64,000 nt of DNA. Source: Rebecca billardiae RCC1528 (taxonomy: Eukaryota > Protista > Haptophyta). The notes below the pieces were generated by a model that ran no database searches, had not been told where the DNA came from, and saw only the letters and a list, made by a program, of their open reading frames with translations. Location: positions 1,488,001 through 1,552,000 of the forward strand of contig OZ251222.1 in NCBI GenBank assembly GCA_965240325.2, read 5' to 3'. A program made the position numbers and the translations under genes. Positions within the stretch are counted from its first letter, which is position 1, and every line of letters begins with the position of its first letter. Of this stretch, positions 23,428-64,000 are shown piece after piece.

Positions 23428-23633
23428 GCCTCGCGCGCCAACGGTCTTCGACGTGCGCGACTCCGGACTCGCGGGGCGCGGGCCGCCGCCCGCCGCCCGC
23501 CGAGTCAGTCAGCCGGACCATCTTCAATCTCCGGACGCGCTCGAGATCTGCGCCGTCCACTTTTCAGATGATGATTTCCGCCAGCCTGACGGCGGTCGAT
23601 TTTCGTTCGATGCGCCGGCTCAGCGCGATAAAA

Positions 23634-36257: not shown

Positions 36258-38228
36258 TGATTAAACTTTTCTGAGGATAGCGCACCAGCAAAATCCCTTG
36301 ACCGCCATCCGGATTTTACGGAGGCCGCGTTTGGACGCAGAAACGCGCGATGGCGAGGCCCGCCCTCGCACCACCGCTCTCGCGAGATCGCGACCGTGCG
36401 ACCTGCGGCGTTGCGCTCGACGCGCTCTTTCTGCTCGGAGGCCGCGAGGACTCCCAGGTGCGCCAGCTCGCGAGCGCGCACCTTCCTCCTCGCCGCGCTC
36501 GCCGAGCACAAGCCGATCTGCAGCAGATGTGCAAGGAGCCGCATGTGGCCTTCCTCGCGCGCGCGGCACGGCTGCACACGAAAATCGTTAGAGGGCACTT
36601 CTCCGCGCATTCTACATTTTGGGGAAAGAACGCCTGAACTGCACAGAAAGTGCCCTCTAACGCTTCCGCTCCTCGCCGTTGCGTGCACGCGCAAAGGAGC
36701 ACTGCAAAGGGTGCGACTGGGAGCATTCCTTCTCCCGGGCGGCCACCACGGCCTCGGAGGTGGTGAGGAACGCGTCGGCGACCACGGCATGGACCACCTC
36801 CGTCGCGCCGGACACTCCGGTCGCCCCTCGCCGGACTCCATCCTCGCTGCGCGCTGACCGTTTGCCGAGCGGGCTGCCCCCGCCGCCTGCCCGGCGTGTG
36901 CCCGCGTGGTGACACAAGATGGTCGAAGGCGTGGCAGCGCGGTGGTGCGTGCGATCGGGGGACCCCACCTGAGCTACGACACGGGCGCGCGCGCTCATCC
37001 GTGCTCATCACGGTGGTGCACGCGCGCGTCGCGCGCTCGTCGGCTGTCGCGCGCTGACGGCTGGGCTGCTTTGGGGTGTCGGCGGCGGCCACAGCTCGCT
37101 GGTACGGGCGCGATGGTGGCTGCGAGTGGTACGCGGCGTTGCACCAGGTCCATGTGCGTCACGCACGACGCTCGGCCGGCTCGCCCTCGGACCATTGGCT
37201 GAGTTCTACTCGCTGCGCGCGCCGCGCGCGGGAGCCGCTCGGCAGCTGCTCGAGGCGCAAAGTGCGCCCCGCGCGCTGAACGTGGGCACGACGAGGTGGT
37301 GCGGCGAGCGTGCGCGGGTGTGTGTGCGTGATGGGCACCCCCATTGCGCTACTTGCCATGCACATCTGCCTCTCGCCAAGCCTTCGACACGATTGCTGCA
37401 AGCGCTGCTCGGAGGCGCGCTCGCGGGCTCGCGCGCGTTTGAATCTGGGCTCGGCGGCGATCGCGTGGACGAGGAGCAGCGCGGTGCACGGTGGCGGAGC
37501 GCGTGCGGAGCGCAGCCTACACCTCCTACACGCTCAATCCAGACACATCGCGCATGCTCGCGCGACCTCCTCGGTCCATCACGTGCGCGTGCGCGCGCGA
37601 GCAGGTGTGCATTCGCCGGGCGCGTTCACGGCGCGCCGCGTTGGCGCGCGCGCACCGATACCCGTGCGCAGCTCGACGAGCGAGCGCGGTGTGTTTCGAT
37701 GCGTATGGGGAGGCTCGAATTTACGCGCGCGCACGCGCCGGCCCTCGCCGCCCCTTCGCTCGCCCACGCCTCATCTGCGCGCTCGGCGTTTGCACGCAGC
37801 TGCTCATCCTTTCCAACACGTGCACAAACGAGCAGATAGCGCTGGGCGAGGTCGATTGGTGCGTCAGATATTCGGCAACGACCAGCCCCGCTCGTGTGCC
37901 GCCGCTCGTGCTACTCTTGACGACCACCTCTGGCTCGGTCGCGCGCACGAGGCTGCTCGCGGGCCCAATCGTGCCGTGTACCGTCAAGCTGTACCGTGCG
38001 CAGCGAGGCGCACTCAGACGTCCGCATGGGCTCGCATGCGAGGGCCCGGCAGTGCGACGCGTCGATGGAGCATGCTCCGGATACGCTTCGGCGCACTTTC
38101 CGACGCGCACGAGCCGCTCGAAGGCGCGGAAGGGCGCCCAAACGGGGCAACCGCCATTTTGCGCCACTTCGGCCCGGATGGCGGTCAAGGGAAATTGCTG
38201 GTGCGCTATCCTCAGAAAAGTTTAATCA
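36258..38228. mobile_element. Non-autonomous DNA transposon (1971 bp) with 55-bp TIRs, inserted in a TA/GATA microsatellite
   Basis: The TIR TGATTAAACTTTTCTGAGGATAGCGCACCAGCAA(AA/TT)TCCCTTGACCGCCATCCGG lies at 36258-36312 and (rc) 38174-38228, with TATA on both sides. No transposase ORF recognised. Confidence 0.9.
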
Positions 38229-38859
<631 letters not shown>

Positions 38860-41991: not shown

Positions 41992-42134
41992 CTTGACTGT
42001 CGCTTGACGAAATGGGAGGTCACACAGTCTGGAATCGTCATCGTCACATTTCAAGACACTGGCTGCCCGAACGCCAAGAACGCCCACATTTGAGGCTCCT
42101 GAGTCCTGACCACCTCCCACCCCTCAAAAACACC

Positions 42135-45100
42135 ATGGGCCGAGACGACGATGATGAGCTCCTCGACAAGCAGGCGCCTCAGAGCGAGGACGGGGGGTGG
42201 TCAACGGCGCTCCCCGCCGAGTTGCAGAAGGTGATGATACGCTCGCAGAAGCGCGAGCTCACCGAGCGTCACCGCCGGCTGAGGGCGTACGCCAGCCGCT
42301 CCAAAGGCTCTGACGCCCGGCGCGACGTTCCCGGCCTGAGCACCCAGATGGACGATACGCCGGGCGTTGGCGTTGTCGACCTCGTCCTCGTCGTGCCACG
42401 CGGAAAGGCGCCCGATGGCGACGAGGAGCAGGGCGAGGAGCAGGGCGAGTCCATCATGGCCTGGGCCAGCCGGCGGCTGAGTGGGGGCAAGCGCGAGCGC
42501 GTGCAGCACCTGCAAGCTGCGACGAGCGCGCTCGTGCGCGCCGGGCTGGAGATCCAGGTGTCTCACAGCTCGGACGGCAACTGGACCTTCTTCATGCTGT
42601 CGGCCTCCGATGCGCGCCTTGCGCGGGAGGCCGAGCGATCGCACTTCGACAAGCGCCTGCGGCCTGAGTACCGCGTGTTTGACGTGGGCTTCCGCGAGTT
42701 CTCTGTGCACTTCAAGGGCCTCTTTGCGCGCGGGCTGGACGGGTACTTCTCCGCGCTTGAGCGGCAGCAGCTCATCCTGAGGATCATCGAGGCCGACCGA
42801 CGCCGCGGGGGCGCCGGGCTCGACCTCGACCGCCTCGTGGTCGAGGGCGTGATCACCGACTACATCTCGCTGCCCGCGGGCGCGTACGTGAAGCGGCTGC
42901 GCACCTCGTGGATCAGGACGTTCGGCTCGCCGCCGATCGACGACATCCGCGACTACCTGGGCGAGCGCGTCGCGTTCTACTTCGCGTGGGTGACCACGTA
43001 CACGGCGTGGCTCGGCGGGCTCGCGCTCGTGAGCCTGGCCGTGCAGATCTACGCGTGGGTGACGTCCATCGACAACGTGCTGCTGCCCGTGTACTGCGTC
43101 GTGGTGTGCGTGTGGTGCACGCTCTTCCTCGAGTGGTGGAAGCGGCGCAACGTCGAGCTGGCATACCGGTGGGACTCCGAGGACCTCGACGCGCACCAGC
43201 CTCTGCGCCCCGAGTTCATCGCCAAGGAGGGGCTCGAGCGTCGGCGCGGCCTGTACACGCCAGAAGGCTTTGTCGACGCGCCTGACCTGGTGCCCGAGGA
43301 GCGCGCCGTCCCCTACTACCCGGAGGGGCGGCGGAAGGTGATCAGCACGGTCAACCTGGTGGGCACGCTCGTCCTCATGTGCGGTGTGTCGGCGACCGTG
43401 ATCGGCATCTTCGCTTTCAAGGTCTTCCTCGCCGCATCCGCGGAGCAGACGTGGTGGGGCGCCAACGCCGTCAATGTCGCGGCGTTCCTGAACACCGTCT
43501 TCATCACGATCATGAACTATGTGTGGGCATGGGTGTCGATCAAGCTGAACGACATGGAGGTGCATCACTCCGACGATGCCTACGAGAACGCGCTGATCGT
43601 CAAGACGTTCGCCTTCCAGTTCATCAACTCGTACATCGCTCTCTTCTACCTCGCGTTCATCGCTGGCGCCGAGCTCAACCTGTTTGGCCTGCGCGAGGAG
43701 GGCACGGGCGAGCCACTGCACGACTCGTGCCCGCCCGCCGGCGACGACGGGCAGCCGGACTGCATGCTTGCGATGTACTCGCAGATGCAGATGATCATCC
43801 TGGTCAAGCAGGGCTCGCGCCACGTGCAGGCGCTCCTCCCGCTCCTCTACCGCTGGTACATGGCTCGGCGCGCGAACATGGCGATCGAGGTGGAGGACCG
43901 CACGCTCACGCAGCGCATCGAGCACGAGCTGTCGCTGCCCGAGTACGCGGGCACGTTCGTCGAGTACAACGAGATGATCCTGCAGTTCGGGTACATGACG
44001 ATGTTCGCGGTGGCGTACCCGCTCGGGGCTGTGATCTGCTTCCTGAACAACGTGCTCGAGCGCCAGACGGACGCGATCAAGGTGCTGCTCTTCTGCCGCC
44101 GCCCGCGCGCGATGCGCGCCAACTCGATTGGCGTCTGGGAGTCGATCCTGCACTTCATCTCGATCCTCGCGGTCTTCACGAACTGCCTCGTCATGTACCT
44201 CTCGTCGGACGCGCTGAAGTTCTATGGGGCCCACTCGACTGCGCTCGTGATCGTCGTCTTGGCAGTGGAGCACGTGCTTTTCGCGCTCAAGTACGGCCTG
44301 GCCACCCTGATCCCCGACACGCCGTTCTGGGTGACGGCTGCAAAGGCGCGGATGCAGCGGAGGCTGCGGGAGATTGAGCTCAACAAGAAGGCGCAGGAGC
44401 TCACGCCGTCGGAGGCTGTGGCCGCGGCGGCTGCTGACGGCGATGACCATCGTAAGTATAACTTCCTGAACCCCTTTGGCCGGTTCGCGACCGCCGGCCA
44501 GGCCGCTCCTGAGACGGAGGAGGAAGAGGTGAGGCTCCTGGAGCCGTTTGCGCCCACTGCGCGCACATCGGCAGGGCTGGCTCCGCGACCGCGCTGGCCT
44601 CCCGCGCATTACACTCGCCGCCTCGTGCGTCTGACGTTCTGCCTACCTTGCTCGTGCTCGCGTGCTCGCGAACTGCGTCGGTGCAGGACGAGCCAGATGT
44701 CGTCCTCGTCTTCAAGGCCGTCGAGGACGACACCGAGGAGGAGAAGGCAAAGAAGATCCAAGAGCAGCGCTTGCAGCTCAAGGACGACCTGACCCGCGCA
44801 GGTGCGTGCGTGCGATTGGGGCCTGGGAGCAGGTGCCACGCATTCCAGCGTGCGAGTGCGACTCACGGCACGCCCCTGCGCGTGTGACGGCACGCCCCTG
44901 CGTGTGTGCCGCACGCCTCGTCGCGCGCGCAGGCCTCAACGTGAGCGTCAGCTGGGGCTCGAAGGGCGAGCGGCTGTACTACCTCCTCACCGGCACCGAC
45001 GGCCGCTTTGACGAGGCAGCCGAGGACATGCACATGAGTAAGAGGCTGCAGTACGAGGAGGACACGGGCTCGCGGATCGGATACAAGGTGTTCCACCGGA

Positions 45101-46821
45101 AGGACAAGCACCTCTTCGCCTCGGCGCAGGACGAGTTCTTCACGGAGCTCGAGCGCCAGATGCTCACCTTCCACGTCGTCGAAGGCGACGCACGCGAGAA
45201 CGGCGCCGGGCTCGACCTCGACCGCCTCGTGGTCGAGGGCGTGATCACTGACTACATCTCGCTGCCCGCGGGCGCGTACGTGAAGCGGCTGCGCACCTCG
45301 TGGATCAGGACGTTCGGCTCGCCGCCGATCGACGACATCCGCGACTACCTGGGCGAGCGCGTCGCGTTCTACTTCGCGTGGGTGACCACGTACACGGCGT
45401 GGCTCGGCGGGCTCGCGCTCGTGAGCCTGGCCGTGCAGATCTACGCGTGGGTGACGTCCATCGACAACGTGCTGCTGCCCGTGTACTGCGTCGTGGTGTG
45501 CGTGTGGTGCACGCTCTTCCTCGAGTGGTGGAAGCGGCGCAACGCCGAGCTGGCGTACATTTGGGACAGCGAGCACGTGTCTGACTTTGAGCCTCTGCGC
45601 CCCGAGTTCATCGCCAAGGAGGGGCTCGAGCGTCGGCGCGGCCTGTACACGGCCCAGGGCTTTGTGGAAATCGACGACGACCCCGGCGTGCAGCAGGTCC
45701 CCTACTTCTCGGAGGATCTGCGGAGGGCCATCATGGCATGCAACTCGATGTTCACCTTGATGCTCGGCTTCTTCGTGGTCACGAGCGTGATCGGCATCTT
45801 TGCTTTCAAGGTCTTCCTCGCCGCATCCGCGGAGCAGACGTGGTGGAGCGCCAACGCCGTCAATGTCGCGGCGTTCCTGAACACCGTCTTCATCACGATC
45901 ATGAACTATGTGTGGGCATGGGTGTCGATCAAGCTGAACGACATGGAGGTGCATCGCTCGGACGATGACTACGAGAACGCGCTGATCGTCAAGACGTTCG
46001 CCTTCCAGTTCATCAACTCGTACATCGCTCTCTTCTACCTCGCGTTCATCGCTGGCGCCGAGCTCAACCTGTTTGGCCTGCGCGAGGAGGGCACGGGCGA
46101 GCCACTGCACGACTCGTGCCCGCCCGCCGGCGACGACGGGCAGCCGGACTGCATGCTTGCGATGTACTCGCAGATGCAGATGATCATCCTGGTCAAGCAG
46201 GGCTCGCGCCACGTGCAGGCGCTCCTCCCGCTCCTCTACCGCTGGTACATGGCTCGGCGCGCGAACATGGCGATCGAGGTGGAGGACCGCACGCTCACGC
46301 AGCGCATCGAGCACGAGCTGTCACTGCCCGAGTACGCGGGCACGTTCGTCGAGTACAACGAGATGATCCTGCAGTTCGGGTACATGACGATGTTCGCGGT
46401 GGCGTACCCGTTCGGGGCTGTGATCTGCTTCCTGAACAACGTGCTCGAGCGCCAGACGGACGCGATCAAGGTGCTGCTCCTCTGCCGCCGCCCGCGCGCG
46501 ATGCGCGCCAACTCGATTGGCGTCTGGGAGTCGATCCTGCACTTCATCTCGATCCTCGCGGTCTTCACGAACTGCCTCGTCATGTACCTCTCGTCGAAAT
46601 CCTTGCGACGCGATTTCCGTCTGAATGCCACCGGCGTTGTGATGGTGAGTCTCGCGGTCGAGCACGCGCTCTTCCTCTTCAAGTTTGGCCTGAGCCAGCT
46701 TATCCCCGACACGCCATTCTGGGTGACGAAGGAGCGCGCGCGCACGGCTTGGCGTGTGAACGAGTTGGAGCTCGTGGCCGCATCAGCACAGCCCACGGCA
46801 TCGGCTCCAGCAGAGGCCTGA
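42135..46821 (+). CDS. Tandem double anoctamin/TMEM16 (two full Anoctamin units, ~1465 aa). Introns 44529-44686, 44802-44932
   Basis: Each half has PIDDIRDYLGERVAFYFAW, FLEWWKRRN, YENALIVKTFAFQFINSYIALFYLAF, EYNEMILQFGY, NNVLERQTDAIK, IGVWESIL, VEH and IPDTP. The GT-AG introns join the halves with no stop. Confidence 0.92.
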
Positions 46822-54535: not shown

Positions 54536-57391
54536 TCACGCAGCGGCTGCCTGCTGCTGCCGCATCATCTGATGCCTGAGGTTGATGCGCCGCGGCAGCG
54601 TCGAGTGCCTGCTGCTGAGTGCAGCAGTGGACGGGCGCATCGCGAGCGCAGCGGCTGGCGGGCGCTGCATCGGCTCGTCAGTGCGGGTGGCCGGCGTCAG
54701 GTGTGGCGGCGTGATGGCGGGAGGGCCCGCGCTCGCTTCGCTGCCGACTGCCCGGGCGGCAGCATGCGATCCAGATGTTGCCCAATCCAGCCGATGCAGA
54801 TGCTGGGCGCTGGCAGCGGTGCGGGCGGCGGAGGTCGGCCGCAGGCGTGGAGCGAGGAGCGCAGACGAGGGACGCGCCAAGGGCGCTGCAGGCAGAGCGC
54901 CCGCCTCTCTGCTTGCAGACGAGACCGAGGCGGAGGAATGCGCAGGCCGAGTTGGCACACTGGTCGTAGCCCACTCGTGCGATGCCGCGTCGCCAGCACG
55001 AGTGGCGTGCCCCTCCTTGCCCGTCGCTGGTGCGCCGCCCCGGGCGTCCGCGCCGCCGTCACCGCCGCCGACGGCCTCAATCGTGCGCACGTACGCCTGC
55101 GCGTGCGCGTCAAAGCGCACGCCGACGCCGCGCCAAGACTGCCCCGGCGCTGATATGCGTGCTTCCTCAGCTGAACTGGGTCGGCCGAGTGCCCGGGCCA
55201 CCGTGCTCGGTGGGGCCAGCATGCTCGCACCATGCCCAGCAGACACAGAGCCCGCCGACGCGCCGTGGCTGGCCACCGTCGGCAGGGCACGCGCTCCGGT
55301 CGAGAGATGCGGTGGAGACAACGATTGCGCCCGACTCAGGGGCAGGCTGGGGCCGATGCGCGCCGGGTGAGCTGGAGAGGCGGTGGCTGATGTGCTGCCG
55401 GCCCTTTCCGGCACCACCGAGCCGGCGCGCTGGCTCCGGGGGAGGCTCGAGCCGCTGAGGACGGGGCGAGGAGGAGAGGCGGTGGCTGATGTGCTGCCGC
55501 CCCTGGCCGGCACCATCGAGCTCGCGCGCGAGGGGGCCGCCTTCTCGCCTCGGCCAGCGGCACTCGACTGCGCCTCTGACAGGACGGTGGCCACCGCGCG
55601 CGCCGACCTGTGCAGCAGGTCGAGCCACTGGCCCCAGCGCTCGTTGTGGTACGCCTTGCACGCCTCGATCGTCTGCGGCCCCAGGATCCGGAAGAACTCG
55701 TCGCGCTCGATGGCGAGCAGCTCGCACTCCGAGGCGGTCACAACCGTGAAGTGGTTCGTGCGGTTGCTCGAGAGCTCCCCGAGCAGGGTCTTGCTGCCGT
55801 ACACGCCGATGTCGCGCTCGAGCCGCTCCTCCCAGGTCTGGCCGGTGGCCGTGCCGTGCCGCGCATAGCCGTGCAGCCGGACCGCGACGTACCCCTTGCG
55901 CACGATCACGACCGTGCTCGCCGGCATGCCCACCTTGAGCACGGTGCTGCCGGCCGCGAGCGAGACCGTTTTCATCCGGTATTGCAACCGGCTGAGATCT
56001 GACTTGTCGACGCTCGCGAGCTGCGGCACCGAGTGCAAGAAGGCGAGCTTCGCCGTCGTGCTGTTCTCCTTGCCCTTGCGCACCAGGGCCAGCAGGTTGC
56101 GGAAGTGCACGACCACCACCTGCGACGCGCAAGATGCGCGCACGCGCGATCACGTGATGGGCGGCCGCACGCTTGATGCGACACCGCCGCGCGGGCCAGG
56201 TGCTGACGCGCGGGCGCTCTCGCGCGCACCGTGGCCTCCTTGACAACGACAGCACTCGCCGCGCGCGGCTGCTCGTAGATGGCGGCCAGCTCCCCAAACT
56301 GGTGCCCCGCATGGCACACGGCCAAAGCCGGGCCGTACTTGGTCACGACGTTCTCCCTGCGAGCGACAGCGGGACAGGGCGCCGTCGCGCGAGCAACGGT
56401 GAGCGGCGCGCGCGGAACCGGCCGGCCTCAGCGGCGGGCGGCGCCATGCCCCGCGCGGTGCGCAACGGCAGCGGCCGGCGGCGCCGTGCCCCGCGCAGTG
56501 CGCAGCGGGCGCGCACCAGTCGACGTGCTCTCCCGCGCCCTCGTCCGACGGCTGCCACTTGGCCATCCGCTGCGCGTCGGCGATCGCCTTGGACGTGTCC
56601 GCGTCCGCGCGGCGGAACATGCCGACCGAGCCCGTCATGACGATGTACATGTCGTCGCCCGTCGCGTCCTGCCGGAAAAGCACCGTGTTGGGCTTGAGGC
56701 ACTTGACCGTGCACGCGTTGATGAACGAGTCAATGTGGTTCTTGCGCAGCGCGACCATTCGCTCGTCCTTCATGTCCAGCGTGTGCACCCAGGAGCGCAG
56801 CAGCTCGTATTCCTCGTCAGTGCGCCCCTCGAGCGGGCGAAGCAGCGCCTGTGTGACGCTCTCGACCAGGCGGCGCTTGGCCTCCTCGTCCGCGGCAGAG
56901 AGCGCGCCACCCTGCCCGGCCTCCTGCTCGCGCACCTTCTCGAGCTGCTGCAGATTCTTCACGGCGTCCCACGCCGCGGTCGCGAAGCCAGGTCGAACGG
57001 ACGCGCGCGACCCCGCGATCGAGATCCGCCGGTCGAACCCCGCTGGCACGTCGACCAAGATGTCTGCCTCCGGCTCGGCCAACTCGTCCTCATCATCATC
57101 CACGTACTTGTCTGTGACCGCGTCGAGGCGCGGATCGCCGCTGCTGCCGTTCTTGCCGCTCGGGGATGCGATGACAGCCGACGCGCCAGGCGACAGGGAG
57201 AGCCCCTTCGCCGCCTGCACGACGAATGGCGGCGTACGGTTCCCGGGCGAGACGGGCGCGAAGTGCTTCCGCGGGCTCACCGGCCCAAGCATCGCGCACA
57301 ACGTGTCCTTGCGAGGTGCAGCTTCCGAGCTCGTGATGTCATCTCCGGATTCCCTAATCTCGCCTGGCTGAGCTGTACATGTGCGTCTCAT
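54536..57391 (-). CDS. Protein with two cyclic-nucleotide-binding domains (CNBD2-like) and a disordered tail. Introns 56357-56516, 56120-56229; start uncertain
   Basis: VLFRQDATGDDMYIVMTGSV and FGELAAIYEQPRAASAVV form the first domain. The second reads VLKVGMPASTVVIVRKGYV...LGELSS...CELLAIERDEF. Confidence 0.85.
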
Positions 57392-57642
57392 TCTTAGCGG
57401 AAGCTGTAGTTACCGGTCGGCAAATGACGACGCGGACGATGCGATTTTACTCCGCCATCGAACCTGGAGGAGGAAGGCGGACGTACTACTGCTACTACTA
57501 GTACTTATTTGTCCTCTTGGCTAAACCGTCATCACTTTTTAACCGTGCTGCGGATCTCCAGAGCGGGGTGAGCCGGGGTCTCCTCGAGACAGGAGCTGCC
57601 GCCGCCGCCCCGGCCGGCTCCCGTGTCCGGCCGTTGCACCGA

Positions 57643-57732: not shown

Positions 57733-59590
57733 ATTATAAGTGTATTACCCGCTAGAGTACTCTTGCTAGTTGCTTCCCAGTACTGGACTGGGATGAGCAT
57801 TGCCTGGCAACACATGCTGTTCGAGAATCGAGGGTTCGCCCGTTAGGTCGCCGTCGGAACCGAAGTCGCCCCGACTATTGCCGCTGGCTCGCCTCGGAGC
57901 AAGTGTGGACGAATAATACGCGAGATGCATCAGCACTCGAGTCGAGCTGCTTTAGCGGCTTAGCATGCTCTGGGGCAAGCTCGTAGTCGGTAGTCGAGCC
58001 ATGGCCAGTGTGTGGAAGCGTACCGATGATCTTTGACGATGGTGGCGTGCGGTCTCACGGCCAGTCGTTGAGCCAACTGGCACAACTGCTCTGCCAACCG
58101 AATGTCAATGACTTGAAGGGGCAGCACAGGTTCGGACAGGTTACTGTCCGAGCTGTACGCGATCCGTAGTCAGTACTCAGTAGTACCGCGCTTGGCTAGC
58201 TATGTGTTGCAGCGGTTACTGTCATGAGTGTCAGGGGTGCGAGGCTCAATCAATCATTCGGCAATGGTCCCAATCCGCGGCCCGCATTCAGTGCTCCCCG
58301 TGGTCGCTCTACAGAGCCAGTGTACTAAGAATAAGAGACGCACACAGCTCAGGCACTAGGCAGGCGAGATTACAGTTTACTATGTTTTAACGTGCACACC
58401 TGGTACCGTTTGCAAATGATCGCTCAGACGCTCAGTCAGGCAGTCAGTCGCGATGAGTGACACGCGCTCCGTTGGTCCTTAGTAGCGCGTCGCGGACCCA
58501 ACGCAGACGAGCCAGGTAGAGCCGTGCCTCCCGCGAGTGGGAGGAATGGGACGACGGACCCCGGAACGTCCATCGACATCGCCACATCGGACGTCGAGAG
58601 CACGTCCATCTGCTGTGTTCATCAATCATCATGAACAACCGCCCTTGCCTTCAGTTGGCCAAGGGCGGTAAGGGCTGTCAACTCCCAGTGGCGCCGGGTG
58701 GCGGAGGTTGGGGGCCCCAAGGCTTCTGAGACAAACGCGTGAAGCGCACTGCTTAGGAGGGGGGGAAGGGCTCCTAAGCAGGGCCTGGAGTCCGGACGCG
58801 GCCGCCGCTGCCGCGGGCGCTGCGAGGTTTGAGTCCGGGTCGCCCTTCCCACGTCGCGCCGCCGCGCGAGAACGCGACGTAGGCCGCGAGGACGTCCCCC
58901 CGCGCGCGGCGCGTGGTGCGCCGAGCAAGAGCACGTGTACTGCCGCCCTCTGCCGCCGCTCGTCACCTCATCTCACCCGCGTTGCTCCGCGCGGGCGCCG
59001 TGCGACGCCGGCGACGTGACTCAGCTTGCACACGCCGGATGAGAAGCTGCACCCAGAGGCCGAGCTGCGCTCTAGCCCCTGGTGCGCCCGGTGGGCAGCG
59101 TGCACATGGATGTTATGCGTCTTCCCCGCGCTCAGTGGTCTGTCTCGAGGCGTCTCTAGAGTGAGTTGTTGGCTCTGCTACACGACTGCGTTTGAATTGC
59201 GCGTGTCGACGCACTCTGTCATGCCCGTGCGTGGGCAGTGTACGTCCTCAGGTTGCAGGCGCACGCGCGCGCCTGGTCGCAGTAATCATAGGCCTACCCG
59301 ACACCAACGATTTTGGGTCCTGCACGGTCATCAGGTGGGCGCAGTGCACGTGCGTGCGCGGTGCGAGTTGCATCCAAGCCGCGACGCCTTTGCGCGCGCT
59401 GCTCGCGTTGGCGGAGAGAGGCGAGGAGCGACCGCCGACGCGTACCTGGGGACTACGTATGACCTTGGTCGACTACCAGCCTCGTCGCGTCCGCGCGCAC
59501 GGGCCGTATTCGTCCGCACCGACGCTCGCGAGGTACGCTAGCAGCGGCACCGGGGGCACGGTGTCGCCCTTCAGGGGTTTGAGTCACAAG

Positions 59591-60698
59591 CCCAAGGGAG
59601 GTCCGGGCCGGGAGCTCCCAGCGAGCGGCCAGCGCGACGTCACTGCAAAGTTTTCCCTGAGCGCCGGGCGGCGGCGGCGGCGAGGGCGAGTGCTCCGCTG
59701 GCGGGGCTCGCACGGGGCACGGCGCTGCGGGCGCGGATGTGCCCGCAGAGCCGGCGCGTGCGGACGGGCTGTTGCGGGAGAGCACTCGGCGCCCTCCTGC
59801 GCCGCGCGTCTTGCGCCACGCCTCTTTCGCCTCGGTTCAGGGCAGCGCGCACATGCGCGCCGCGTCAAGGCCAGCCTTGCCTGCGCCGCAGCCGACCGCG
59901 CGCGCGCCGTGCGCGGCGTGGTCGGGAACCAACGGGCGCTGCTGCCGGGCGAGATGGCGACACCACGCGCGCACGCCATGCCGCCCCGCGATGCCGCGAA
60001 AGGGCACGGCAATAGATGTGCACAGCTGTTGACGAGTGCTGATCACTTGTCGTGCCAAGCCAGACCTGAGCTCGAAGAACGGCTGATGAAAGAGCATCAG
60101 CGCGAGGAAAGCGTCGCATCCAGCACCTCTACATGACCACACGATGATGAACATCCATGTAAGAGTAGCCCGCGCGCCCGTCTGGCACTGTTCTGCGTCT
60201 CAATGATTGTCCCGACAAGGGACCGCGAGGCCGTGCACACCATTTGTGAAAAGTCGAAGAGGCATGCAAACGGACCGACGACACGCTCGTCAAGGCGTGG
60301 CGGGGCGGCATGGCGTGCGCGCGTGGTGTCGCCATCTCGCCCGGCAGCAGCACCCGTTCGTTCCCGACCACGCCGCGCACGGCGCGCGCGCGGTCGGCTG
60401 CGGCGCAGGCAAGGCTGGCCTTGACGCGGCGCGCATGTGCGCGCTGCCCTGAGCCGAGGCGAAAGAGGCGTGGCGCAAGACGCGCGGCGCAGGAGGGCGC
60501 CGAGTGCTCTCCCGCAACAGCCCGTCCGCACGCGCCGGCTCTGCGGGCACATCCGCGCCCGCAGCGCTGTGCCCCGTGCGAGCCCCGCCAGCGGAGCACT
60601 CGCCCTCGCCGCCGCCGCCGCCCGGCGCTCAGGGAAAACTTTGCAGTGACGTCGCGCTGGCCGCTCGCTGGGAGCTCCCGGCCCGGACCTCCCTTGGG
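59591..60698. mobile_element. Foldback element A with ~400-bp TIRs and CCC...GGG ends
   Basis: 59591-59989 is the near-identical rc of 60300-60698, with a 310-bp spacer. Confidence 0.9.
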
Positions 60699-60700
60699 GG

Positions 60701-61719
60701 CCCCTCAACTCGTGCGGCCGCGCGGCGCAGCGGCTAAGTCTCCTGGGGCGCCGCCCTGGAGGGCGCGTGGGGTGCGCACGCCGCGGGCTCCTGCGCCCGC
60801 GGCAGCGGCCGCGGACACGGCGCGCGTGGTTGGTCGCCTGCTAGACAGCACGTAGTACCCTTCCACGCCGCGCGCCGCGCTCGCCGGCGCCCTCGCTGTG
60901 CCTCAGGCCAGCCGCGCACGCGCGCCGCGCCAATGGCCAGCTGTGGCCACGAGCCAGCCGCCGGCGCGCGCGCGGTGCGCAGTGCGGTCGGCGCGGGTCG
61001 GGCGCGCGCCCGGGCCGAGGCTCGCGTATGATGGGCGCGCGTCATGCCGCCTCGCGCCGCCGCGCTGACGCCCGCATGGGTCGGCGCGCACGCGTTTACA
61101 TGCTGTCGAGTGTGCATTGCCATGTTTGAAAATGCTCACGTTGAGACGATCATGGGACGGCAGCGACGCGTGCTAGACAAGCGCAGACCACTAATATGTG
61201 CACGGCCAGCCTCATGTTATGGCAAGCAAGTCCCCGAGTGCCCGCGTTCGTCGCACTGATGCGCTCACAACCACTTATCCAAGCTCATTTCTGATTGCCG
61301 AGGAATGCTCGACGAGCACTCTTCAGCAGCCGCGTGCAACGTGATCAAGCTCGTGGGTGGCGGCGCGAGGCGGCATGACGCGCGCCCATCATACGCGAGC
61401 CTCGCCCCGGGCGCGCGCCCGACCCGCGCCGACCGCACCGCGCACCGCGCGCGCGCCGACGGCTGGCTCGTGGCCACGGCTGGCCATTGGCGCGGCGCGC
61501 GTGCGCGGCTGGCCTGAGGCACGGCGAGGGCACCGGCAAGCGCGGCGCGCGGCGTGGGAGGGTACTACGTGCTGTCTAGCAGGCGACCAACCACGCGCGC
61601 CGTGTCCGCGGCAGCTGCCGCGGGCGCAGGAGCCCGCGGCGTGCGCACCCCACGCGCCCTCCAGGGTGGCGCCCCAGGAGACTTAGCCGCTGCGCCGCGA
61701 GGCCACACGAGTTGAGGGG
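60701..61719. mobile_element. Foldback element B with ~360-bp TIRs and CCCC...GGGG ends
   Basis: 60701-61061 is the rc of 61359-61719 with scattered mismatches, with a ~297-bp spacer. Confidence 0.9.
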
Positions 61720-61861
61720 CACGGAACCTCCGCCACTCGGCGCCACTACTGGGAGTTGACAGCCCTTACCGCCCTTGGTACAGTTTACTACGCGGGTACA
61801 ATGTCCGCACGGAAATGTCGCTTTGGCAGCGACTGGCCTTTCCGGTCCCGTCACGGGGGAC

Positions 61862-64000
61862 ATGACGCCCACGACCGCCGCTGTCGCCGCGGTCGCGGCG
61901 GCGAGCGCGTGTCTCGTGGCGTGGGCACTGCGCTCTGGGCTCCATCGGCGCCGTCGGCGCCGTCTGACCCCCTACGAACGACGGCTCCATGCGCTCGACG
62001 GCTTTGTGCGCCGGCTCGCTTGCACGCCGCATACCTCGCAGCTCGTGCTGCGCGGCTCTTACCTGCTCCGCGCGTACCTGCCGGCGCTGCCACGGCCTGT
62101 GGCGGACCTTGACTTTCTCGCACTGTGCCCCAACGACGCTCCGCTGGTCGAATCCATGATCCGTGACGCGTGCGACCAGCGCGTGGCTGACGGCCTCGCG
62201 TTTGCGCGCGGCGCCGTCTCCTCGCAGCGGCACTGGGAGGGCACGGAGCACCCGGGGCTCAAGCTGACGGTGGAGTGCCACGAGCTGAACGTCGGCTCCG
62301 ACGCGTCGCGCGCGCCGGCGACGCATCGCTTCAGCGTCGACGTGGGCTGGGGCGATCCGCTGGTGCCGCCGCCGGGCGCGCTGCACGTGCGCGCCGCGCC
62401 CGTGGCGGCAGGCGGCGCATCCGCCTGCGTTCCGCTCGCCGCACGGGCGGAGACGCTGCTGGCGTGGAAGCTTCACGGCCTCTTCGAGCACGAGAGCGCG
62501 GGTCTGAGCCAAGCCGGCGTCCCCAAGGGCTACTGGCGCCCGAAGGACCTCTTCGACTGCTGCCTGCTCGCCACCGCCGGCGCGCGGCTCATGCGCGCGT
62601 CCGCGCTGCGCGACGCGGTCGTCGCGGCCTTCGCCTCGCGCGGCTACCCGGTGAGCCGGCTGGTGCGGCTGGCGCACGGCCGCTTCGGGACGAGCACGAA
62701 GAGCGCGCGCAATTACGCTCGTTGGCGTGCGTCCGTCCTCGCGAGCGCCCCGGCCGCCGCCGAGTCTGGCCGCCGGGGCGCGGCTGCGCCGATCCCCGAG
62801 AGCGCGCAGGCATGCGTCGCAGCGCTCGCGCCGACGTGCGCCGCGGTGCTGCGCGAGCTGGGCTACGCGCCGCTGCCCGGCGAGACGCTCCCCTTCGCCC
62901 CGGCGTGGCAGGTGGCCGAGCTCGAACGCACGCTCGCCTCCGCGCCGTCGCGCGTCGTCGTCGATCGCGCCGCGCCCATCACGCCGAGCACGGCGCCGCG
63001 CGCGGCGGCGCGCGAGCCGTCGGCGACCACCGCGACGGCGCCCGAGGCCCTCTTCATCGTCGGAGGCGCGAACCGTGCCAAGTGGGAGGAGACGGCCAAA
63101 GTGCTGGCCGAGTACGCCAGCCTGGTCGTGCCGTGCGCGTACACGCCGCCCGAGGAGCTGCGCTTCCCGCCCGGCCTGGCGGACGGCTCGACGCGCGCGG
63201 TGGACGTCGTGCACGCGCTCGCGCGCCACTGCCACAAGGCGCTCGGCCGCGCGTGCATCGTCGAGCTCGCGCTGCTCGAGCTGGCTGGCGGCGCGCGCCC
63301 GCTCGTGCTGCATCGGCTGCCAGCGCACGAGGAGCGCGGCTTCGCCCGCGCGCACGCCGGCCGCGCCGCGCGCTTCCACGCGCTCATCGGGTACATCGGC
63401 CCGGATGGCGGGCCGGTCGAGGTGCTCGAGGGCGATCTGGACGGCGAGATTGTGAGCCCCGTGCGCGGCGAGCGCGCGCACGGCTGGAACCGGTGCTTCC
63501 AGCCCGAGGGCCACGGGAAGACGCTGGGCGAGCTGGGCGAGTCGCTCGCGTACGTGCAGCCGCGCGTGCGCCCGCTGCTCGAGCTCGCCGCCATGCTCCG
63601 CACACCGCTCGCGTACGGCACCCTCGAGCGCAGCCGCGGGCTGTTTGAGCTGCACGTGAGCGTGCGCACGCCGAGCGAGCCGGAGGGCGGCGTGCCCACC
63701 TTCCGCGAGGCGTGCGGGCTGCTCGGCGTCAAGGCCGTCGTGATCGATAACGAGGGCGGCGCCACGCCGCGCCAGCTCATGACCGCCTCGTACACGCAGG
63801 GCTCGCTGCGCGACGCGCTCACCGCCGCGTTCGTGCTCGCGCGCCGGCTGAGCGCGCTCGGCTTCTGCGTGCTCCGAACCAAGGTGGAGGCTGGATTCCA
63901 CAACCCGGGCGTGCCGGCGACCGACGCGGAGGCCGCGGCGCTCTCGCCGCACAACTACTTCGAGGTGCACTGGAAGCTGCGCCTCCCGCGCGGTGGCGCC
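61862..64000 (+). CDS. Fusion protein, 3'-truncated by the window: signal anchor, AbiEii/AbiGii-like nucleotidyltransferase, HAM1/ITPase-like domain and FExH-motif domain
   Basis: Hand translation from ATG 61862 is open to the window end (713 codons). NTase: LVLRGSYLL...RPVADLDFL...VDVGWGDP...ETLLAWKLHGL...RPKDLFD. HAM1-like: ANRAKWEE...EGDLDGEIV...RGERAHGWNRCFQPEGHGKTLGEL. Third domain: FELHVSV...RTKVEA...NPGVP...YFEVHWK. Confidence 0.85.
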   Translation, partial: MTPTTAAVAAVAAASACLVAWALRSGLHRRRRRRLTPYERRLHALDGFVRRLACTPHTSQLVLRGSYLLRAYLPALPRPVADLDFLALCPNDAPLVESMIRDACDQRVADGLAFARGAVSSQRHWEGTEHPGLKLTVECHELNVGSDASRAPATHRFSVDVGWGDPLVPPPGALHVRAAPVAAGGASACVPLAARAETLLAWKLHGLFEHESAGLSQAGVPKGYWRPKDLFDCCLLATAGARLMRASALRDAVVAAFASRGYPVSRLVRLAHGRFGTSTKSARNYARWRASVLASAPAAAESGRRGAAAPIPESAQACVAALAPTCAAVLRELGYAPLPGETLPFAPAWQVAELERTLASAPSRVVVDRAAPITPSTAPRAAAREPSATTATAPEALFIVGGANRAKWEETAKVLAEYASLVVPCAYTPPEELRFPPGLADGSTRAVDVVHALARHCHKALGRACIVELALLELAGGARPLVLHRLPAHEERGFARAHAGRAARFHALIGYIGPDGGPVEVLEGDLDGEIVSPVRGERAHGWNRCFQPEGHGKTLGELGESLAYVQPRVRPLLELAAMLRTPLAYGTLERSRGLFELHVSVRTPSEPEGGVPTFREACGLLGVKAVVIDNEGGATPRQLMTASYTQGSLRDALTAAFVLARRLSALGFCVLRTKVEAGFHNPGVPATDAEAAALSPHNYFEVHWKLRLPRGGA

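What the first reader, a model, noticed from the sequence alone, without database searches (positions are those of the whole stretch)
61862..64000. Eukaryotic three-domain fusion: AbiEii/MenT-like nucleotidyltransferase, HAM1-like domain and FExH domain, on a membrane anchor
Seen: an apparently intronless + strand ORF that the track omits because it has no stop in the window. It begins MTPTTAAVAAVAAASACLVAWALRSGLHRRRRRR, a hydrophobic anchor followed by a basic run. The ~61973-62730 segment has a full set of AbiEii-like motifs: GS, R..DLD, VDVGWGD, E.LLAWKL and RPKDLFD. Known: AbiEii and MenT are prokaryotic type IV toxin-antitoxin / abortive-infection Pol-beta-type NTases, and MenT toxins add nucleotides to tRNA 3' ends. 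HAM1 folds bind non-canonical NTPs. Inference: a horizontally acquired toxin NTase retained as one polypeptide with nucleotide-sensing or processing modules, possibly for antiviral defence or RNA modification. No AbiEi-like antitoxin is visible upstream. This is the best candidate for an undescribed system in the window.
Basis: partly seen in the sequence, partly recalled or inferred. Interest (0 to 1): 0.88.

Follow-up and report, generated by a model that had tools for sequence, protein, structure and literature searches.

The report
Algal fusion of bacterial AbiE-like RNA cassette
A haptophyte-like alga carries one intron-free gene whose membrane-anchored 1,398-residue protein joins four parts that bacteria encode as a small operon (an RNA-tailing 'toxin' enzyme, its usual partner domain, an inosine-nucleotide-binding module and a tRNA-type RNA ligase), so it looks like a domesticated RNA modification or repair machine, not a lone toxin.

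Summary
The + strand ORF from 61862 is open for 713 codons to the window edge and has a strong coding signature. It carries an AbiEii domain, a Ham1-like domain and a third conserved 'FExH' domain behind a conserved N-terminal membrane anchor. The neighbouring genes are eukaryotic.

The interpretation needs three corrections.
1. The gene has four modules. An identical public contig extends the ORF to 1,398 codons and adds an Rnl1-type RNA ligase.
2. The 'missing antitoxin' is present in cis. The FExH domain matches PADLOC 'AbiEi' models. In 69 of 80 bacterial loci its gene lies directly upstream of an AbiEii gene.
3. The Ham1 module is closest to KomB, a non-hydrolytic dITP sensor, and lacks the second acidic catalytic residue.

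Bacteria encode the same four modules as operons (RNA ligase, then Ham1-FExH, then AbiEii) and in several pairwise fusions. FExH has no Pfam family and no solved relative. It also occurs in jumbo phages (next to RtcB in one) and in giant viruses.

Best reading: a fused RNA or tRNA end-tailing and sealing cassette that originated in prokaryotic conflict systems. The biochemistry is untested. I rate it a new variant of a known kind, with fairly high interest.

The parts
61862..64000 (+). First 713 codons of a 1,398-codon single-ORF gene. By extrapolation from contig L084, the stop would lie at window-equivalent position 66058.
   Evidence: Open frame. First ATG after an in-frame stop. GC3 is 0.90. 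Protein P0125 is 100% identical over 713 aa. L084 DNA matches window 61754-64000 at 2247 of 2247 bases and continues for 2219 nt to a stop.
61874..61963 (+). N-terminal hydrophobic segment (aa 5-23, TAAVAAVAAASACLVAWAL) followed by a basic run (aa 24-34, RSGLHRRRRRR). This is a predicted signal-anchor with the bulk of the protein in the cytosol (positive-inside rule; inference).
   Evidence: Kyte-Doolittle value 2.02. The same feature occurs in P0001, P0003, P0127, P0129 and P0141. A JGI source names a relative (P0275) 'uncharacterized membrane protein'.
62009..62755 (+). AbiEii/DUF1814 (MenT-type) Pol-beta nucleotidyltransferase domain, aa 50-298, of the short PADLOC subtype PDLC02319. Motifs: G65-S66, D82-x-D84, D160, K203, R226-x-K-D-x-x-D232.
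   Evidence: Pfam PF08843, E=3.3e-16. PADLOC, E=6.5e-47. D160, K203 and R226-D232 are invariant in alignment A1. The subtype is shared with the bacterial ligase-fused and Ham1-operon AbiEii proteins.
62762..63037 (+). Linker, aa 301-392. It includes a block conserved among haptophyte-type proteins (CVAALAPTCAAVLRELGYAPLPGE..APAWQV) followed by an Ala/Pro/Thr-rich spacer.
   Evidence: Alignment A1. No family match.
63038..63637 (+). Ham1-like (ITPase-fold) module, aa 393-592. N404/K407, G541-W-N-R544 and R568 are kept. The ITPA catalytic pair E71-D72 reads E468-L469 here.
   Evidence: Pfam PF01725. The family profile hits KomB 8zsg at E=9e-25 and human ITPA at 7e-21, both full length. Alignments.
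63638..64000 (+). First 121 residues (aa 593-713) of the 'FExH' domain; the full domain is aa 593-805. It is a tandem beta-alpha-beta-beta-alpha-beta fold with F595-E-L-H598-V-S600, R672-T-K674-V-E676 and F700-E-V-H703-W-K705. The window edge cuts it off.
   Evidence: PADLOC 'AbiEi' PDLC02277 at E=9e-20 for the fragment and E=3.6e-47 for the full domain in P0125. Invariant residues in a 67-sequence alignment. AF2 model with pLDDT 89 and pTM 0.85.

Best explanation
The ORF is the 5' half of a single-exon nuclear gene of a haptophyte-like alga. It encodes a 1,398-aa protein held on a membrane by an N-terminal anchor, with the rest predicted to face the cytosol.

The protein joins, in one chain, all four modules of a prokaryotic cassette:
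(1) an AbiEii/MenT-type nucleotidyltransferase, an enzyme class that adds nucleotides to RNA (tRNA) 3' ends;
(2) a Ham1-fold module that probably binds a purine NTP such as (d)ITP and may not hydrolyse it;
(3) the FExH domain, which is the regular operon partner of this AbiEii lineage and has unknown chemistry;
(4) an Rnl1-type ATP-dependent RNA ligase, the class that seals broken tRNAs.

Most likely mechanism (inferred, not shown): it is an RNA or tRNA end-remodelling machine. The NTase extends or rebuilds 3' ends and the ligase seals 3'-OH/5'-P breaks. The Ham1-FExH unit acts in cis as the controlling or counter-acting partner of the NTase, possibly gated by a nucleotide. It would be used under stress or infection. 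It is a domesticated conflict-system cassette, not a free toxin.
For: Architecture (shown):
- Domains on the window part.
- Identity to P0125 and to contig L084, which extend the ORF to 1,398 codons.
- The RNA ligase scores 37.3 bits on PF09511 and 32.9 bits on PF09414, both above their cut-offs.
- K1045, D1047, G1048 and E1100 are invariant in 24 sequences; E1196, G1197 and K1213 are conserved in at least 90%.
- The ligase model (pLDDT 89.6) best matches the fungal Trl1 ligase domain and T4 Rnl1.

Cassette (shown):
- The FExH gene lies directly upstream of AbiEii in 69 of 80 bacterial loci, median gap 99 nt.
- Operon RNA ligase, then Ham1-FExH, then AbiEii on a JGI contig and in a Polyangiaceae chromosome, L007.
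- FExH followed by an AbiEii-Rnl1 fusion in L085.
- Fusion counts among the top 150 cluster representatives: Ham1-FExH x39, AbiEii-ligase x8, FExH-AbiEii x6, plus PIN-ligase-AbiEii and ligase-FExH.
- The window's AbiEii is the same PADLOC subtype (PDLC02319) as those in the ligase- and Ham1-bearing operons.

RNA theme seen without an annotated AbiEii nearby:
- An FExH family member lies two genes from RtcB in Salmonella phage Arash and among tRNA genes in Ralstonia phage RP13.

Established knowledge:
- MenT/AbiEii enzymes extend tRNA 3' ends (PMC7450476, PMC10435456, PMC11162799).
- KomB is a HAM1-like protein that binds dITP without hydrolysing it (PMC13454610).
- RlaP is another Pol-beta NTase family genomically linked to RNA ligases and active on RNA (PMC12776372).
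Against: - No activity of any module has been tested.
- FExH has no solved or characterised relative, so its role (enzyme, RNA binder or inhibitor) is open.
- Most actinobacterial loci have only the FExH-AbiEii pair, and 10 have tandem AbiEii paralogues. That pattern looks like a toxin-antitoxin or defence module more than a repair pathway.
- The domain order in the alga differs from the bacterial gene order.
- The part beyond 64000 comes from a separate read-set assembly, not from the window itself.
- Membrane topology and expression are inferred only.
Confidence: 0.5

Rival explanations
1. A cis-fused toxin-antitoxin-like antiviral (abortive-infection) effector. The AbiEii NTase is held inactive by the fused FExH 'antitoxin'. 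The KomB-like Ham1 module senses an infection-derived purine nucleotide such as dITP and releases the NTase, which then blocks translation by tailing tRNAs. The ligase is accessory, for example for recovery.
For: - Membership of AbiEii, and PADLOC 'AbiEi' matches for FExH.
- FExH sits in the upstream, antitoxin-like position in 69 of 80 loci, with tandem AbiEii paralogues in 10.
- The best solved relative of the Ham1 module is the dITP sensor KomB, and the second catalytic acidic residue is lost (PMC13454610).
- FExH homologues occur in jumbo phages and giant viruses, where they could act as antitoxin mimics.
- One Ham1-FExH gene lies near a phage integrase.
Against: - A fixed 1:1 covalent fusion removes the labile-antitoxin logic, although fused toxin-antitoxin sensors are known.
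- Ham1-FExH occurs without AbiEii in Amoebozoa and in L090.
- FExH is linked to RNA ligases of two unrelated families, in phage without any AbiEii annotated nearby.
- FExH has no DNA-binding wHTH like the canonical AbiEi.
- The Ser at the G[GS] NTase motif, which I take to be the MenT-type phospho-acceptor position, is not conserved among the algal orthologues: RGS in the window, RGG in E. huxleyi and Prymnesium (PMC11375011).
Confidence: 0.3
2. A nucleic-acid sanitation or repair enzyme centred on deaminated purines (inosine or xanthosine). Ham1 removes ITP/XTP so that the NTase does not insert them. An EndoV-like nuclease encoded elsewhere nicks at the lesion, FExH trims, the NTase refills and the ligase seals.
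For: - Ham1 family match.
- Endo_dU (PF01949) lies directly beside Ham1-FExH and AbiEii in L088/L089, and overlaps an RNA-ligase gene in L086.
- Possible analogous MazG-like plus FExH fusion in phage RAS14, though the match is weak at 18.8 bits, below the cut-off.
Against: - The Endo_dU link rests on two independent loci, and no Endo_dU was sought or seen near the algal gene.
- The catalytic acidic pair of Ham1 is incomplete.
- The MazG match is below threshold.
- Most FExH-AbiEii loci lack Ham1 altogether.
Confidence: 0.12
3. An artefact or a dead gene: bacterial contamination, a chimeric assembly, or a decaying horizontally acquired pseudogene with no function.
For: All relatives of the individual modules are mainly prokaryotic. 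The species is unidentified.
Against: - The window is one continuous 64-kb sequence without N that also carries kinesin, CAF-1A and anoctamin genes.
- GC3 of 0.90-0.92 matches the other coding ORFs in the window and holds over all 4,194 nt with no stop.
- An independent read-set assembly gives the identical sequence.
- Orthologues with the same architecture and anchor exist in E. huxleyi, Prymnesium and several metagenomic sequences at 41-60% identity, forming one clade with SH-aLRT 96.
- Catalytic motifs are intact in the NTase and the ligase.
Confidence: 0.03

Closest known systems
AbiE / MenAT type IV toxin-antitoxin systems (AbiEii/MenT DUF1814 NTase with an AbiEi/MenA antitoxin)
   Same: The NTase domain is a clear DUF1814/AbiEii member with an intact DxD, catalytic Lys and C-terminal R-x-K-D-x-x-D motif. 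In bacteria it is encoded just downstream of a partner gene, as in AbiE. PADLOC already files the partner under 'AbiEi'.
   Different: The partner (FExH) matches none of Pfam's AbiEi families and has no wHTH; it is a tandem ferredoxin-like domain with conserved Glu, His, Lys and Arg. Here the toxin and its partner are covalently fused, joined to Ham1 and an RNA ligase, membrane-anchored, and encoded in a eukaryote.
KomB of the Kongming anti-phage system (HAM1-like dITP sensor; PDB 8zsg)
   Same: It is the best solved relative of the Ham1 module (E=9e-25, full length). Both lack the second acidic residue of the ITPase catalytic pair: KomB reads E-H, this family reads E-x.
   Different: No KomC (SIR2) or KomA (deaminase) partner is present. 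The module is fused to FExH instead. Whether it binds dITP is untested.
T4 Rnl1 and fungal/plant Trl1 tRNA ligase adenylyltransferase domain
   Same: The C-terminal module scores above threshold on PF09511 and has motifs I, III, IV and V. Its model best matches Trl1-LIG and T4 Rnl1, and it includes a C-terminal helical domain.
   Different: There is no Pnk kinase or 2H CPD healing domain. Instead it is combined with an NTase, Ham1 and FExH. TM scores are only 0.41-0.51, so it is a distant member.
RlaP (PF10127), the 'RNA ligase-associating Pol-beta' NTases of RNA-repair operons
   Same: The concept is the same: a Pol-beta-fold NTase genomically coupled to RNA ligases and acting on RNA (PMC12776372).
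   Different: It is a different NTase family; no PF10127 match was found. RlaP has no FExH or Ham1 partner.
Fused toxin-antitoxin defence proteins (CapRel-type; recalled from my own knowledge, not tested here)
   Same: Toxin and neutralising domain are in one chain, which would allow trigger-dependent release.
   Different: The enzyme families are unrelated. No trigger is known here.

Membership tests
AbiEii / DUF1814 nucleotidyltransferase (PF08843) | Profile match above the curated threshold over most of the domain | tested here: met
   60.4 bits against a cut-off of 22.5, covering profile positions 4-229 of 238. PADLOC AbiEii PDLC02319, E=6.5e-47.
AbiEii / DUF1814 nucleotidyltransferase (PF08843) | Pol-beta NTase catalytic core: hG[GS], DxD metal site, further acidic residue, catalytic Lys (PMC11375011 names the DxD and the lysine) | tested here: met
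   G65-S66, D82-L-D84, D160, K203 and R226-PKD-x-x-D232 are present. D160, K203 and the C-terminal motif are invariant in alignment A1.
AbiEii / DUF1814 nucleotidyltransferase (PF08843) | Nucleotide addition to tRNA/RNA 3' ends; growth inhibition when expressed alone | not testable with these tools
   Needs biochemistry and expression tests.
AbiE type IV toxin-antitoxin system | Cognate AbiEi antitoxin of the COG5340 type (N-terminal wHTH plus C-terminal antitoxicity domain) | tested here: not met
   The FExH domain hits no Pfam family, including the AbiEi families, even at E<=10. Its model is a tandem ferredoxin-like fold. ORFs upstream of the gene have no defence-model hit.
AbiE type IV toxin-antitoxin system | Two-gene operon with the partner gene immediately upstream of the NTase gene | tested here: met
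   Met for the bacterial relatives: 69 of 80 loci, median gap 99 nt. In the window the two are fused in reverse order within one ORF.
AbiE type IV toxin-antitoxin system | Phage defence by abortive infection; antitoxin neutralises the toxin | not testable with these tools
MenAT-type regulation | Conserved Ser/Thr phospho-acceptor in the NTase active-site loop (MenT3 S78, MenT1 T39; PMC11375011) | tested here: inconclusive
   At the G[GS] motif, which I take to be the corresponding position (not verified by alignment to MenT), the window has R-G-S66 while the E. huxleyi and Prymnesium orthologues have R-G-G.
Ham1 / ITPase (PF01725) | Profile match above threshold | tested here: met
   39.7 bits against a cut-off of 22.5, but over only profile positions 107-167. 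The family profile aligns at full length to ITPases and KomB.
Ham1 / ITPase (PF01725) | Complete catalytic acidic pair (human ITPA E71-D72 in 'VEDTCL') | tested here: not met
   The window reads I-V-E468-L469; the family consensus is 'fvElsaL'; KomB reads 'VEHTGL'.
Ham1 / ITPase (PF01725) | ITP/XTP pyrophosphohydrolase activity | not testable with these tools
   Needs an enzyme assay.
Kongming (KomABC) system | HAM1-like KomB together with the SIR2 effector KomC (and KomA deaminase) | tested here: not met
   No SIR2 or deaminase domain is in the protein or among the scanned neighbours. Only the KomB-like module is shared.
Rnl1-type ATP-dependent RNA ligase (PF09511) | Profile match above threshold and covalent nucleotidyltransferase motifs I (KxDG), III, IV and V | tested here: met
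   Met on the part beyond the window (P0125). PF09511 scores 37.3 bits against 28.3; PF09414 scores 32.9 against 27. K1045-L-D-G1048, E1100, E1196-G1197 and K1213 are conserved in 24 sequences. Foldseek top hits are Trl1-LIG and T4 Rnl1.
2H phosphoesterase (considered for FExH because of the paired H-x-T/S-like motifs) | Two H-x-T/S motifs on a LigT-like bilobed fold | tested here: not met
   The motifs are H-V-S and H-W-K. No 2H protein appears among the 50 matches listed by Foldseek against PDB, and there is no Pfam hit.
RlaP (PF10127) | PF10127 profile match | tested here: not met
   No such hit in the Pfam scans. The resemblance is functional only.

The most novel reading that the evidence does not exclude
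FExH is a new enzyme or regulator family. FExH plus AbiEii, with optional Ham1 and RNA ligase, would then be a previously unrecognised nucleotide-gated tRNA 'tail-and-heal' immune or repair pathway shared by bacteria, jumbo phages, giant viruses and protists. The algal protein would be its membrane-anchored, single-chain eukaryotic form, acting in antiviral defence.
Probability: 0.3. Interest if true: 0.85.

Novelty: new variant of a known kind. Interest (0 to 1): 0.7.

Why it matters
MenT/AbiEii enzymes are known as bacterial tRNA-tailing toxins. This finding shows a whole AbiE-like cassette, with a non-canonical partner domain, captured in one eukaryotic polypeptide and joined to a tRNA-type ligase and a KomB-like nucleotide module.

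It also gives a concrete handle on an uncharacterised domain (FExH). That domain is present in more than 550 bacterial species' genomes, in jumbo phages, in giant viruses and in protists.

The work links three topics that are usually studied separately: toxin-antitoxin NTases, base-modified-nucleotide signalling and RNA repair. It offers a testable example of a prokaryotic conflict system domesticated by an ecologically important algal group that is under heavy viral pressure.

Tried and rejected
- FExH as a 2H phosphoesterase or CYTH-like enzyme. No Pfam hit at E<=10. No PDB hit by sequence or by profile. Foldseek against PDB gave only generic tandem ferredoxin-like proteins at TM 0.25-0.34.
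- FExH as canonical AbiEi. Rejected: no Pfam AbiEi match and no HTH.
- A separate antitoxin gene upstream in the window. ORFs at 59165-61686 have no coding signature and no PADLOC hit.
- Bacterial contamination. Rejected on the eukaryotic neighbours and an independent identical contig.
- Naming a bacterial donor. The quick ML tree leaves the algal clade in an unresolved base, and the careful search did not finish.
- Ligase classification by sequence against PDB. Nothing found. The fold search was needed.
- A word-index search with the AbiEii domain alone gave only 4 hits and no named bacteria.
- Checking whether L084 is a transcript. It has no poly(A) tail, so this is inconclusive.
- Literature. 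No paper in the held library combines AbiEii with '2H phosphoesterase'. Only two general defence-system surveys mention both DUF1814 and RNA ligase, and no title returned by the AbiEii searches describes a eukaryotic fusion. The Burroughs and Aravind 2016 RNA-repair survey is not held, so I could not check whether it already lists this cassette.
- I did not determine the species of the window.
Full report
**1. What is in the window**

The + strand frame starting at ATG 61862 is open for 713 codons up to base 64000. That ATG is the first one after an in-frame stop at 61757-61759. GC content by codon position is 0.76/0.57/0.90, the same signature as the other real coding ORFs of this 61-83% GC window. 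The long antisense ORF (61766-63970) is simply its mirror image.

Other ORFs with the same signature encode a kinesin motor, CAF-1 subunit A, two tandem anoctamins, a patatin-like protein and cNMP-binding proteins. The contig is therefore eukaryotic nuclear DNA. It is not bacterial contamination and it is not human.

**2. Domains on the window part**

- Pfam finds AbiEii (PF08843) at aa 50-298, E=3.3e-16, nearly full length.
- Pfam finds Ham1p_like (PF01725) at aa 499-560, E=6.4e-10, covering only the C-terminal third of the profile.
- PADLOC gives AbiEii model PDLC02319 at E=6.5e-47.
- The quoted motifs are all there: G65-S66, D82-L-D84, VDVGWGD (159-165), K203 and RPKDLFD (226-232). D160, K203 and the last motif are invariant across the four haptophyte-type sequences aligned.
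- The N-terminus is a 19-residue hydrophobic stretch followed by RSGLHRRRRRR. The same arrangement recurs in six haptophyte-type sequences. By the positive-inside rule, the catalytic part should face the cytosol; this is an inference.

**3. The third domain is the partner of AbiEii**

The C-terminal 'FExH' segment has no Pfam family even at E<=10. It has no PDB relative by sequence or by profile. It does match two PADLOC models named AbiEi:
- PDLC02277, E=9e-20 for the truncated piece;
- the same model at E=3.6e-47 over positions 2-194 of 195 for the complete domain.

A profile search found 356 clusters of standalone 'hypothetical' proteins of about 200-240 aa, mostly from Actinobacteria. A genome scan found more than 550 loci in species genomes of Actinomycetota, Myxococcota, Planctomycetota, Armatimonadota, Bacteroidota, Cyanobacteriota and Deinococcota.

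In 69 of the 80 loci fetched, an AbiEii gene lies directly downstream on the same strand, with a median domain-to-domain gap of 99 nt. Ten loci have two or three tandem AbiEii paralogues. Natural FExH-AbiEii fusions also exist in bacteria (P0004 and five more).

So the statement 'no antitoxin visible' is wrong in substance: the partner is fused in cis. It is not a canonical AbiEi, however. The AlphaFold model (pLDDT 89, pTM 0.85) is a tandem beta-alpha-beta-beta-alpha-beta fold. In 67 sequences, the invariant or nearly invariant residues are:
- E-x-H-x-T/S on the first strand;
- R-x-K-x-E on the fourth strand;
- E-x-H-x-K on the first strand of the second half;
- an RFVTQR strand.

Foldseek against PDB returns only generic tandem ferredoxin-like proteins at TM 0.25-0.34. 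No 2H phosphoesterase appears among the matches listed.

**4. Beyond the window edge**

An exhaustive search with the 1,030-aa E. huxleyi homologue (P0001, EMIHUDRAFT_229565, 48% identical to the window protein) returned P0125, a 1,398-aa protein. P0125 is 100% identical to the window ORF over all 713 residues.

Its contig (L084, Logan assembly of run ERR14847148) matches window 61754-64000 at 2247 of 2247 bases. It continues for 2219 nt, and the ORF ends at codon 1398 with GC3 still at 0.92.

The added half completes the FExH domain (aa 593-805). An Ala/Gly/Arg-rich spacer follows. The protein ends in an RNA ligase:
- PF09511 scores 37.3 bits and PF09414 scores 32.9 bits, both above their cut-offs.
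- K1045, D1047, G1048 and E1100 are invariant in 24 sequences, and E1196, G1197 and K1213 are conserved in at least 90% of them. By eye these fall in ligase motifs I (EKLDGS), III (YVCEVV), IV (EGLVLRF) and V (HRAKVKA).
- The ligase model (pLDDT 89.6) best matches the fungal Trl1 ligase domain and T4 Rnl1, at E from 3e-11 to 1e-8. It has a C-terminal helical domain.

The gene therefore has four modules plus an anchor, not three.

**5. The same four modules form a prokaryotic cassette**

- On a JGI metagenome contig, three co-directional genes lie in a row: RNA ligase, Ham1-FExH (P0138) and AbiEii. The first two and the last two overlap.
- A Polyangiaceae chromosome (L007) has RNA ligase (PF09414), then one Ham1-FExH ORF, then AbiEii.
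- L085 has FExH followed by an AbiEii-Rnl1 fusion.
- Two Myxococcota-type loci add an Endo_dU (PF01949) gene.
- Among the 150 best cluster representatives, the architectures are Ham1-FExH (39), AbiEii-ligase (8) and FExH-AbiEii (6), plus PIN-ligase-AbiEii and ligase-FExH.
- The window's AbiEii belongs to the short PADLOC subtype PDLC02319. 

**6. The Ham1 module**

A profile of 23 Ham1 modules from this family aligns at full length to solved ITPases. Its best hit is KomB of the Kongming defence system (8zsg, E=9e-25), ahead of human ITPA (7e-21).

Where ITPA has the acidic pair in 'VEDTCL', KomB has 'VEHTGL', the family consensus is 'fvElsaL', and the window has 'IVELAL'. The N..K motif, the G-W-[DN]-R motif and the conserved Arg are kept.

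KomB is reported to bind dITP but to have lost hydrolysis, acting as a nucleotide sensor (PMC13454610). A sensor role here is therefore plausible but not shown.

**7. Spread outside bacteria**

- Haptophyte-type proteins with the same order and anchor occur in E. huxleyi, Prymnesium and several metagenomic or read-set sequences.
- In a quick ML tree of the FExH domain they form one clade (SH-aLRT 96). That clade lies in an unresolved basal region together with amoebozoan and unnamed Ham1-fused sequences, apart from the main bacterial group (SH-aLRT 87). No donor can be named.
- Ham1-FExH proteins without AbiEii exist in Cavenderia, Heterostelium and Thecamoeba.
- Foldseek against viral models gives good matches (TM 0.56-0.82) to uncharacterised proteins of T4-like and jumbo phages, and of Klosneuvirus, Yasminevirus, Fadolivirus and Bodo saltans virus.
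- By sequence, the family is found in five large phage genomes.
- In Salmonella phage Arash the family member (PADLOC E=4e-22) lies two genes from RtcB (Pfam E=1e-86). In Ralstonia phage RP13 it lies among tRNA genes. In Stenotrophomonas phage RAS14 it may be fused to a MazG-like module, but that match is below threshold.

**8. Reading**

Shown: the architecture, the operon and fusion network, and the intact NTase and ligase motifs.

Inferred: the protein works on RNA, probably tRNA, ends. The grounds for this are:
- MenT/AbiEii enzymes extend tRNA 3' ends (PMC7450476, PMC10435456, PMC11162799).
- The ligase is of the tRNA-sealing Rnl1/Trl1 type.
- FExH is linked to RNA ligases of two unrelated families and to tRNA gene regions.
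- A parallel NTase-ligase partnership is known for RlaP (PMC12776372).

Whether the cassette mainly repairs RNA or mainly acts as a gated abortive-infection effector cannot be decided here, and the two readings are not exclusive. The covalent fusions and the AbiEii-free occurrences of Ham1-FExH argue against a classical labile antitoxin. The upstream position, the AbiEii paralogue arrays, the similarity to KomB and the viral homologues argue for a conflict role.

**9. Comparison and novelty**

The NTase is a member of DUF1814/AbiEii. The system is AbiE-like in gene order but fails the canonical AbiEi criterion. The Ham1 module is KomB-like, but this is not a Kongming system. The ligase is a distant Rnl1-type member.

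In the held library I found no paper combining AbiEii with '2H phosphoesterase'. Only two general defence surveys mention both DUF1814 and RNA ligase. None of the titles returned by the AbiEii searches describes a eukaryotic fusion. One key survey could not be consulted.

PADLOC already models the bacterial partner as 'AbiEi', so the bacterial pair is catalogued but uncharacterised. I rate the finding a new variant of a known kind, with fairly high interest.

Noticed in passing
window 38228-38856: A long (ATAG)x131 microsatellite followed by (AT)x23 forms an AT-rich island (GC 0.2-0.3) in an otherwise 60-80% GC sequence.
   Followed up: partly
window 41997-44789 and 44635-46818 (+): Two tandem anoctamin (PF04547) paralogues lie head to tail (E=3e-114 and 2e-112).
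   Followed up: no
window 24001-26000, within ORF 23145-26279 (+): GC content is extreme (0.83) inside a patatin-like ORF. Many overlapping long ORFs here are composition artefacts.
   Followed up: no
window 61766-63970 (-): A 734-aa antisense ORF lies opposite the gene. Its GC1 of 0.90 mirrors the GC3 of the sense frame, so it is not a gene.
   Followed up: yes
L088:6389-6973 (-), L086:1666-2966 (+): An Endo_dU (PF01949) gene sits beside Ham1-FExH and AbiEii in L088. In a Myxococcaceae MAG (L086) it overlaps an RNA-ligase gene about 4 kb upstream. This may indicate a deaminated-base theme.
   Followed up: partly
P0223 (1425 aa), P0270 (460 aa): Two further fusions occur in the same network: PIN + RNA ligase + AbiEii, and RNA ligase (PF09414) + FExH.
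   Followed up: partly
P0153 (Cavenderia fasciculata DFA_03165), P0186 (Heterostelium album PPL_02324), P0145 (Thecamoeba): Amoebozoa encode Ham1-FExH two-domain proteins without an AbiEii domain.
   Followed up: partly
L093:4995-5594 (Salmonella phage Arash gp122c), L094:5001-5459 (Ralstonia phage RP13), L092:4683-5597 (Stenotrophomonas phage RAS14): FExH family members occur in jumbo phages: two genes from RtcB in Arash, among tRNA genes in RP13, and possibly fused to a MazG-like pyrophosphatase in RAS14 (match below threshold). Structural matches also occur in Klosneuvirus-type giant viruses.
   Followed up: partly
L019, L011, L015, L029, L031, L035, L040 and others: Some bacterial loci carry two or three tandem AbiEii paralogues after a single FExH gene.
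   Followed up: no
window 54539-57409 (-): Two adjacent ORFs have cyclic-nucleotide-binding domains. They may be exons of one gene.
   Followed up: no
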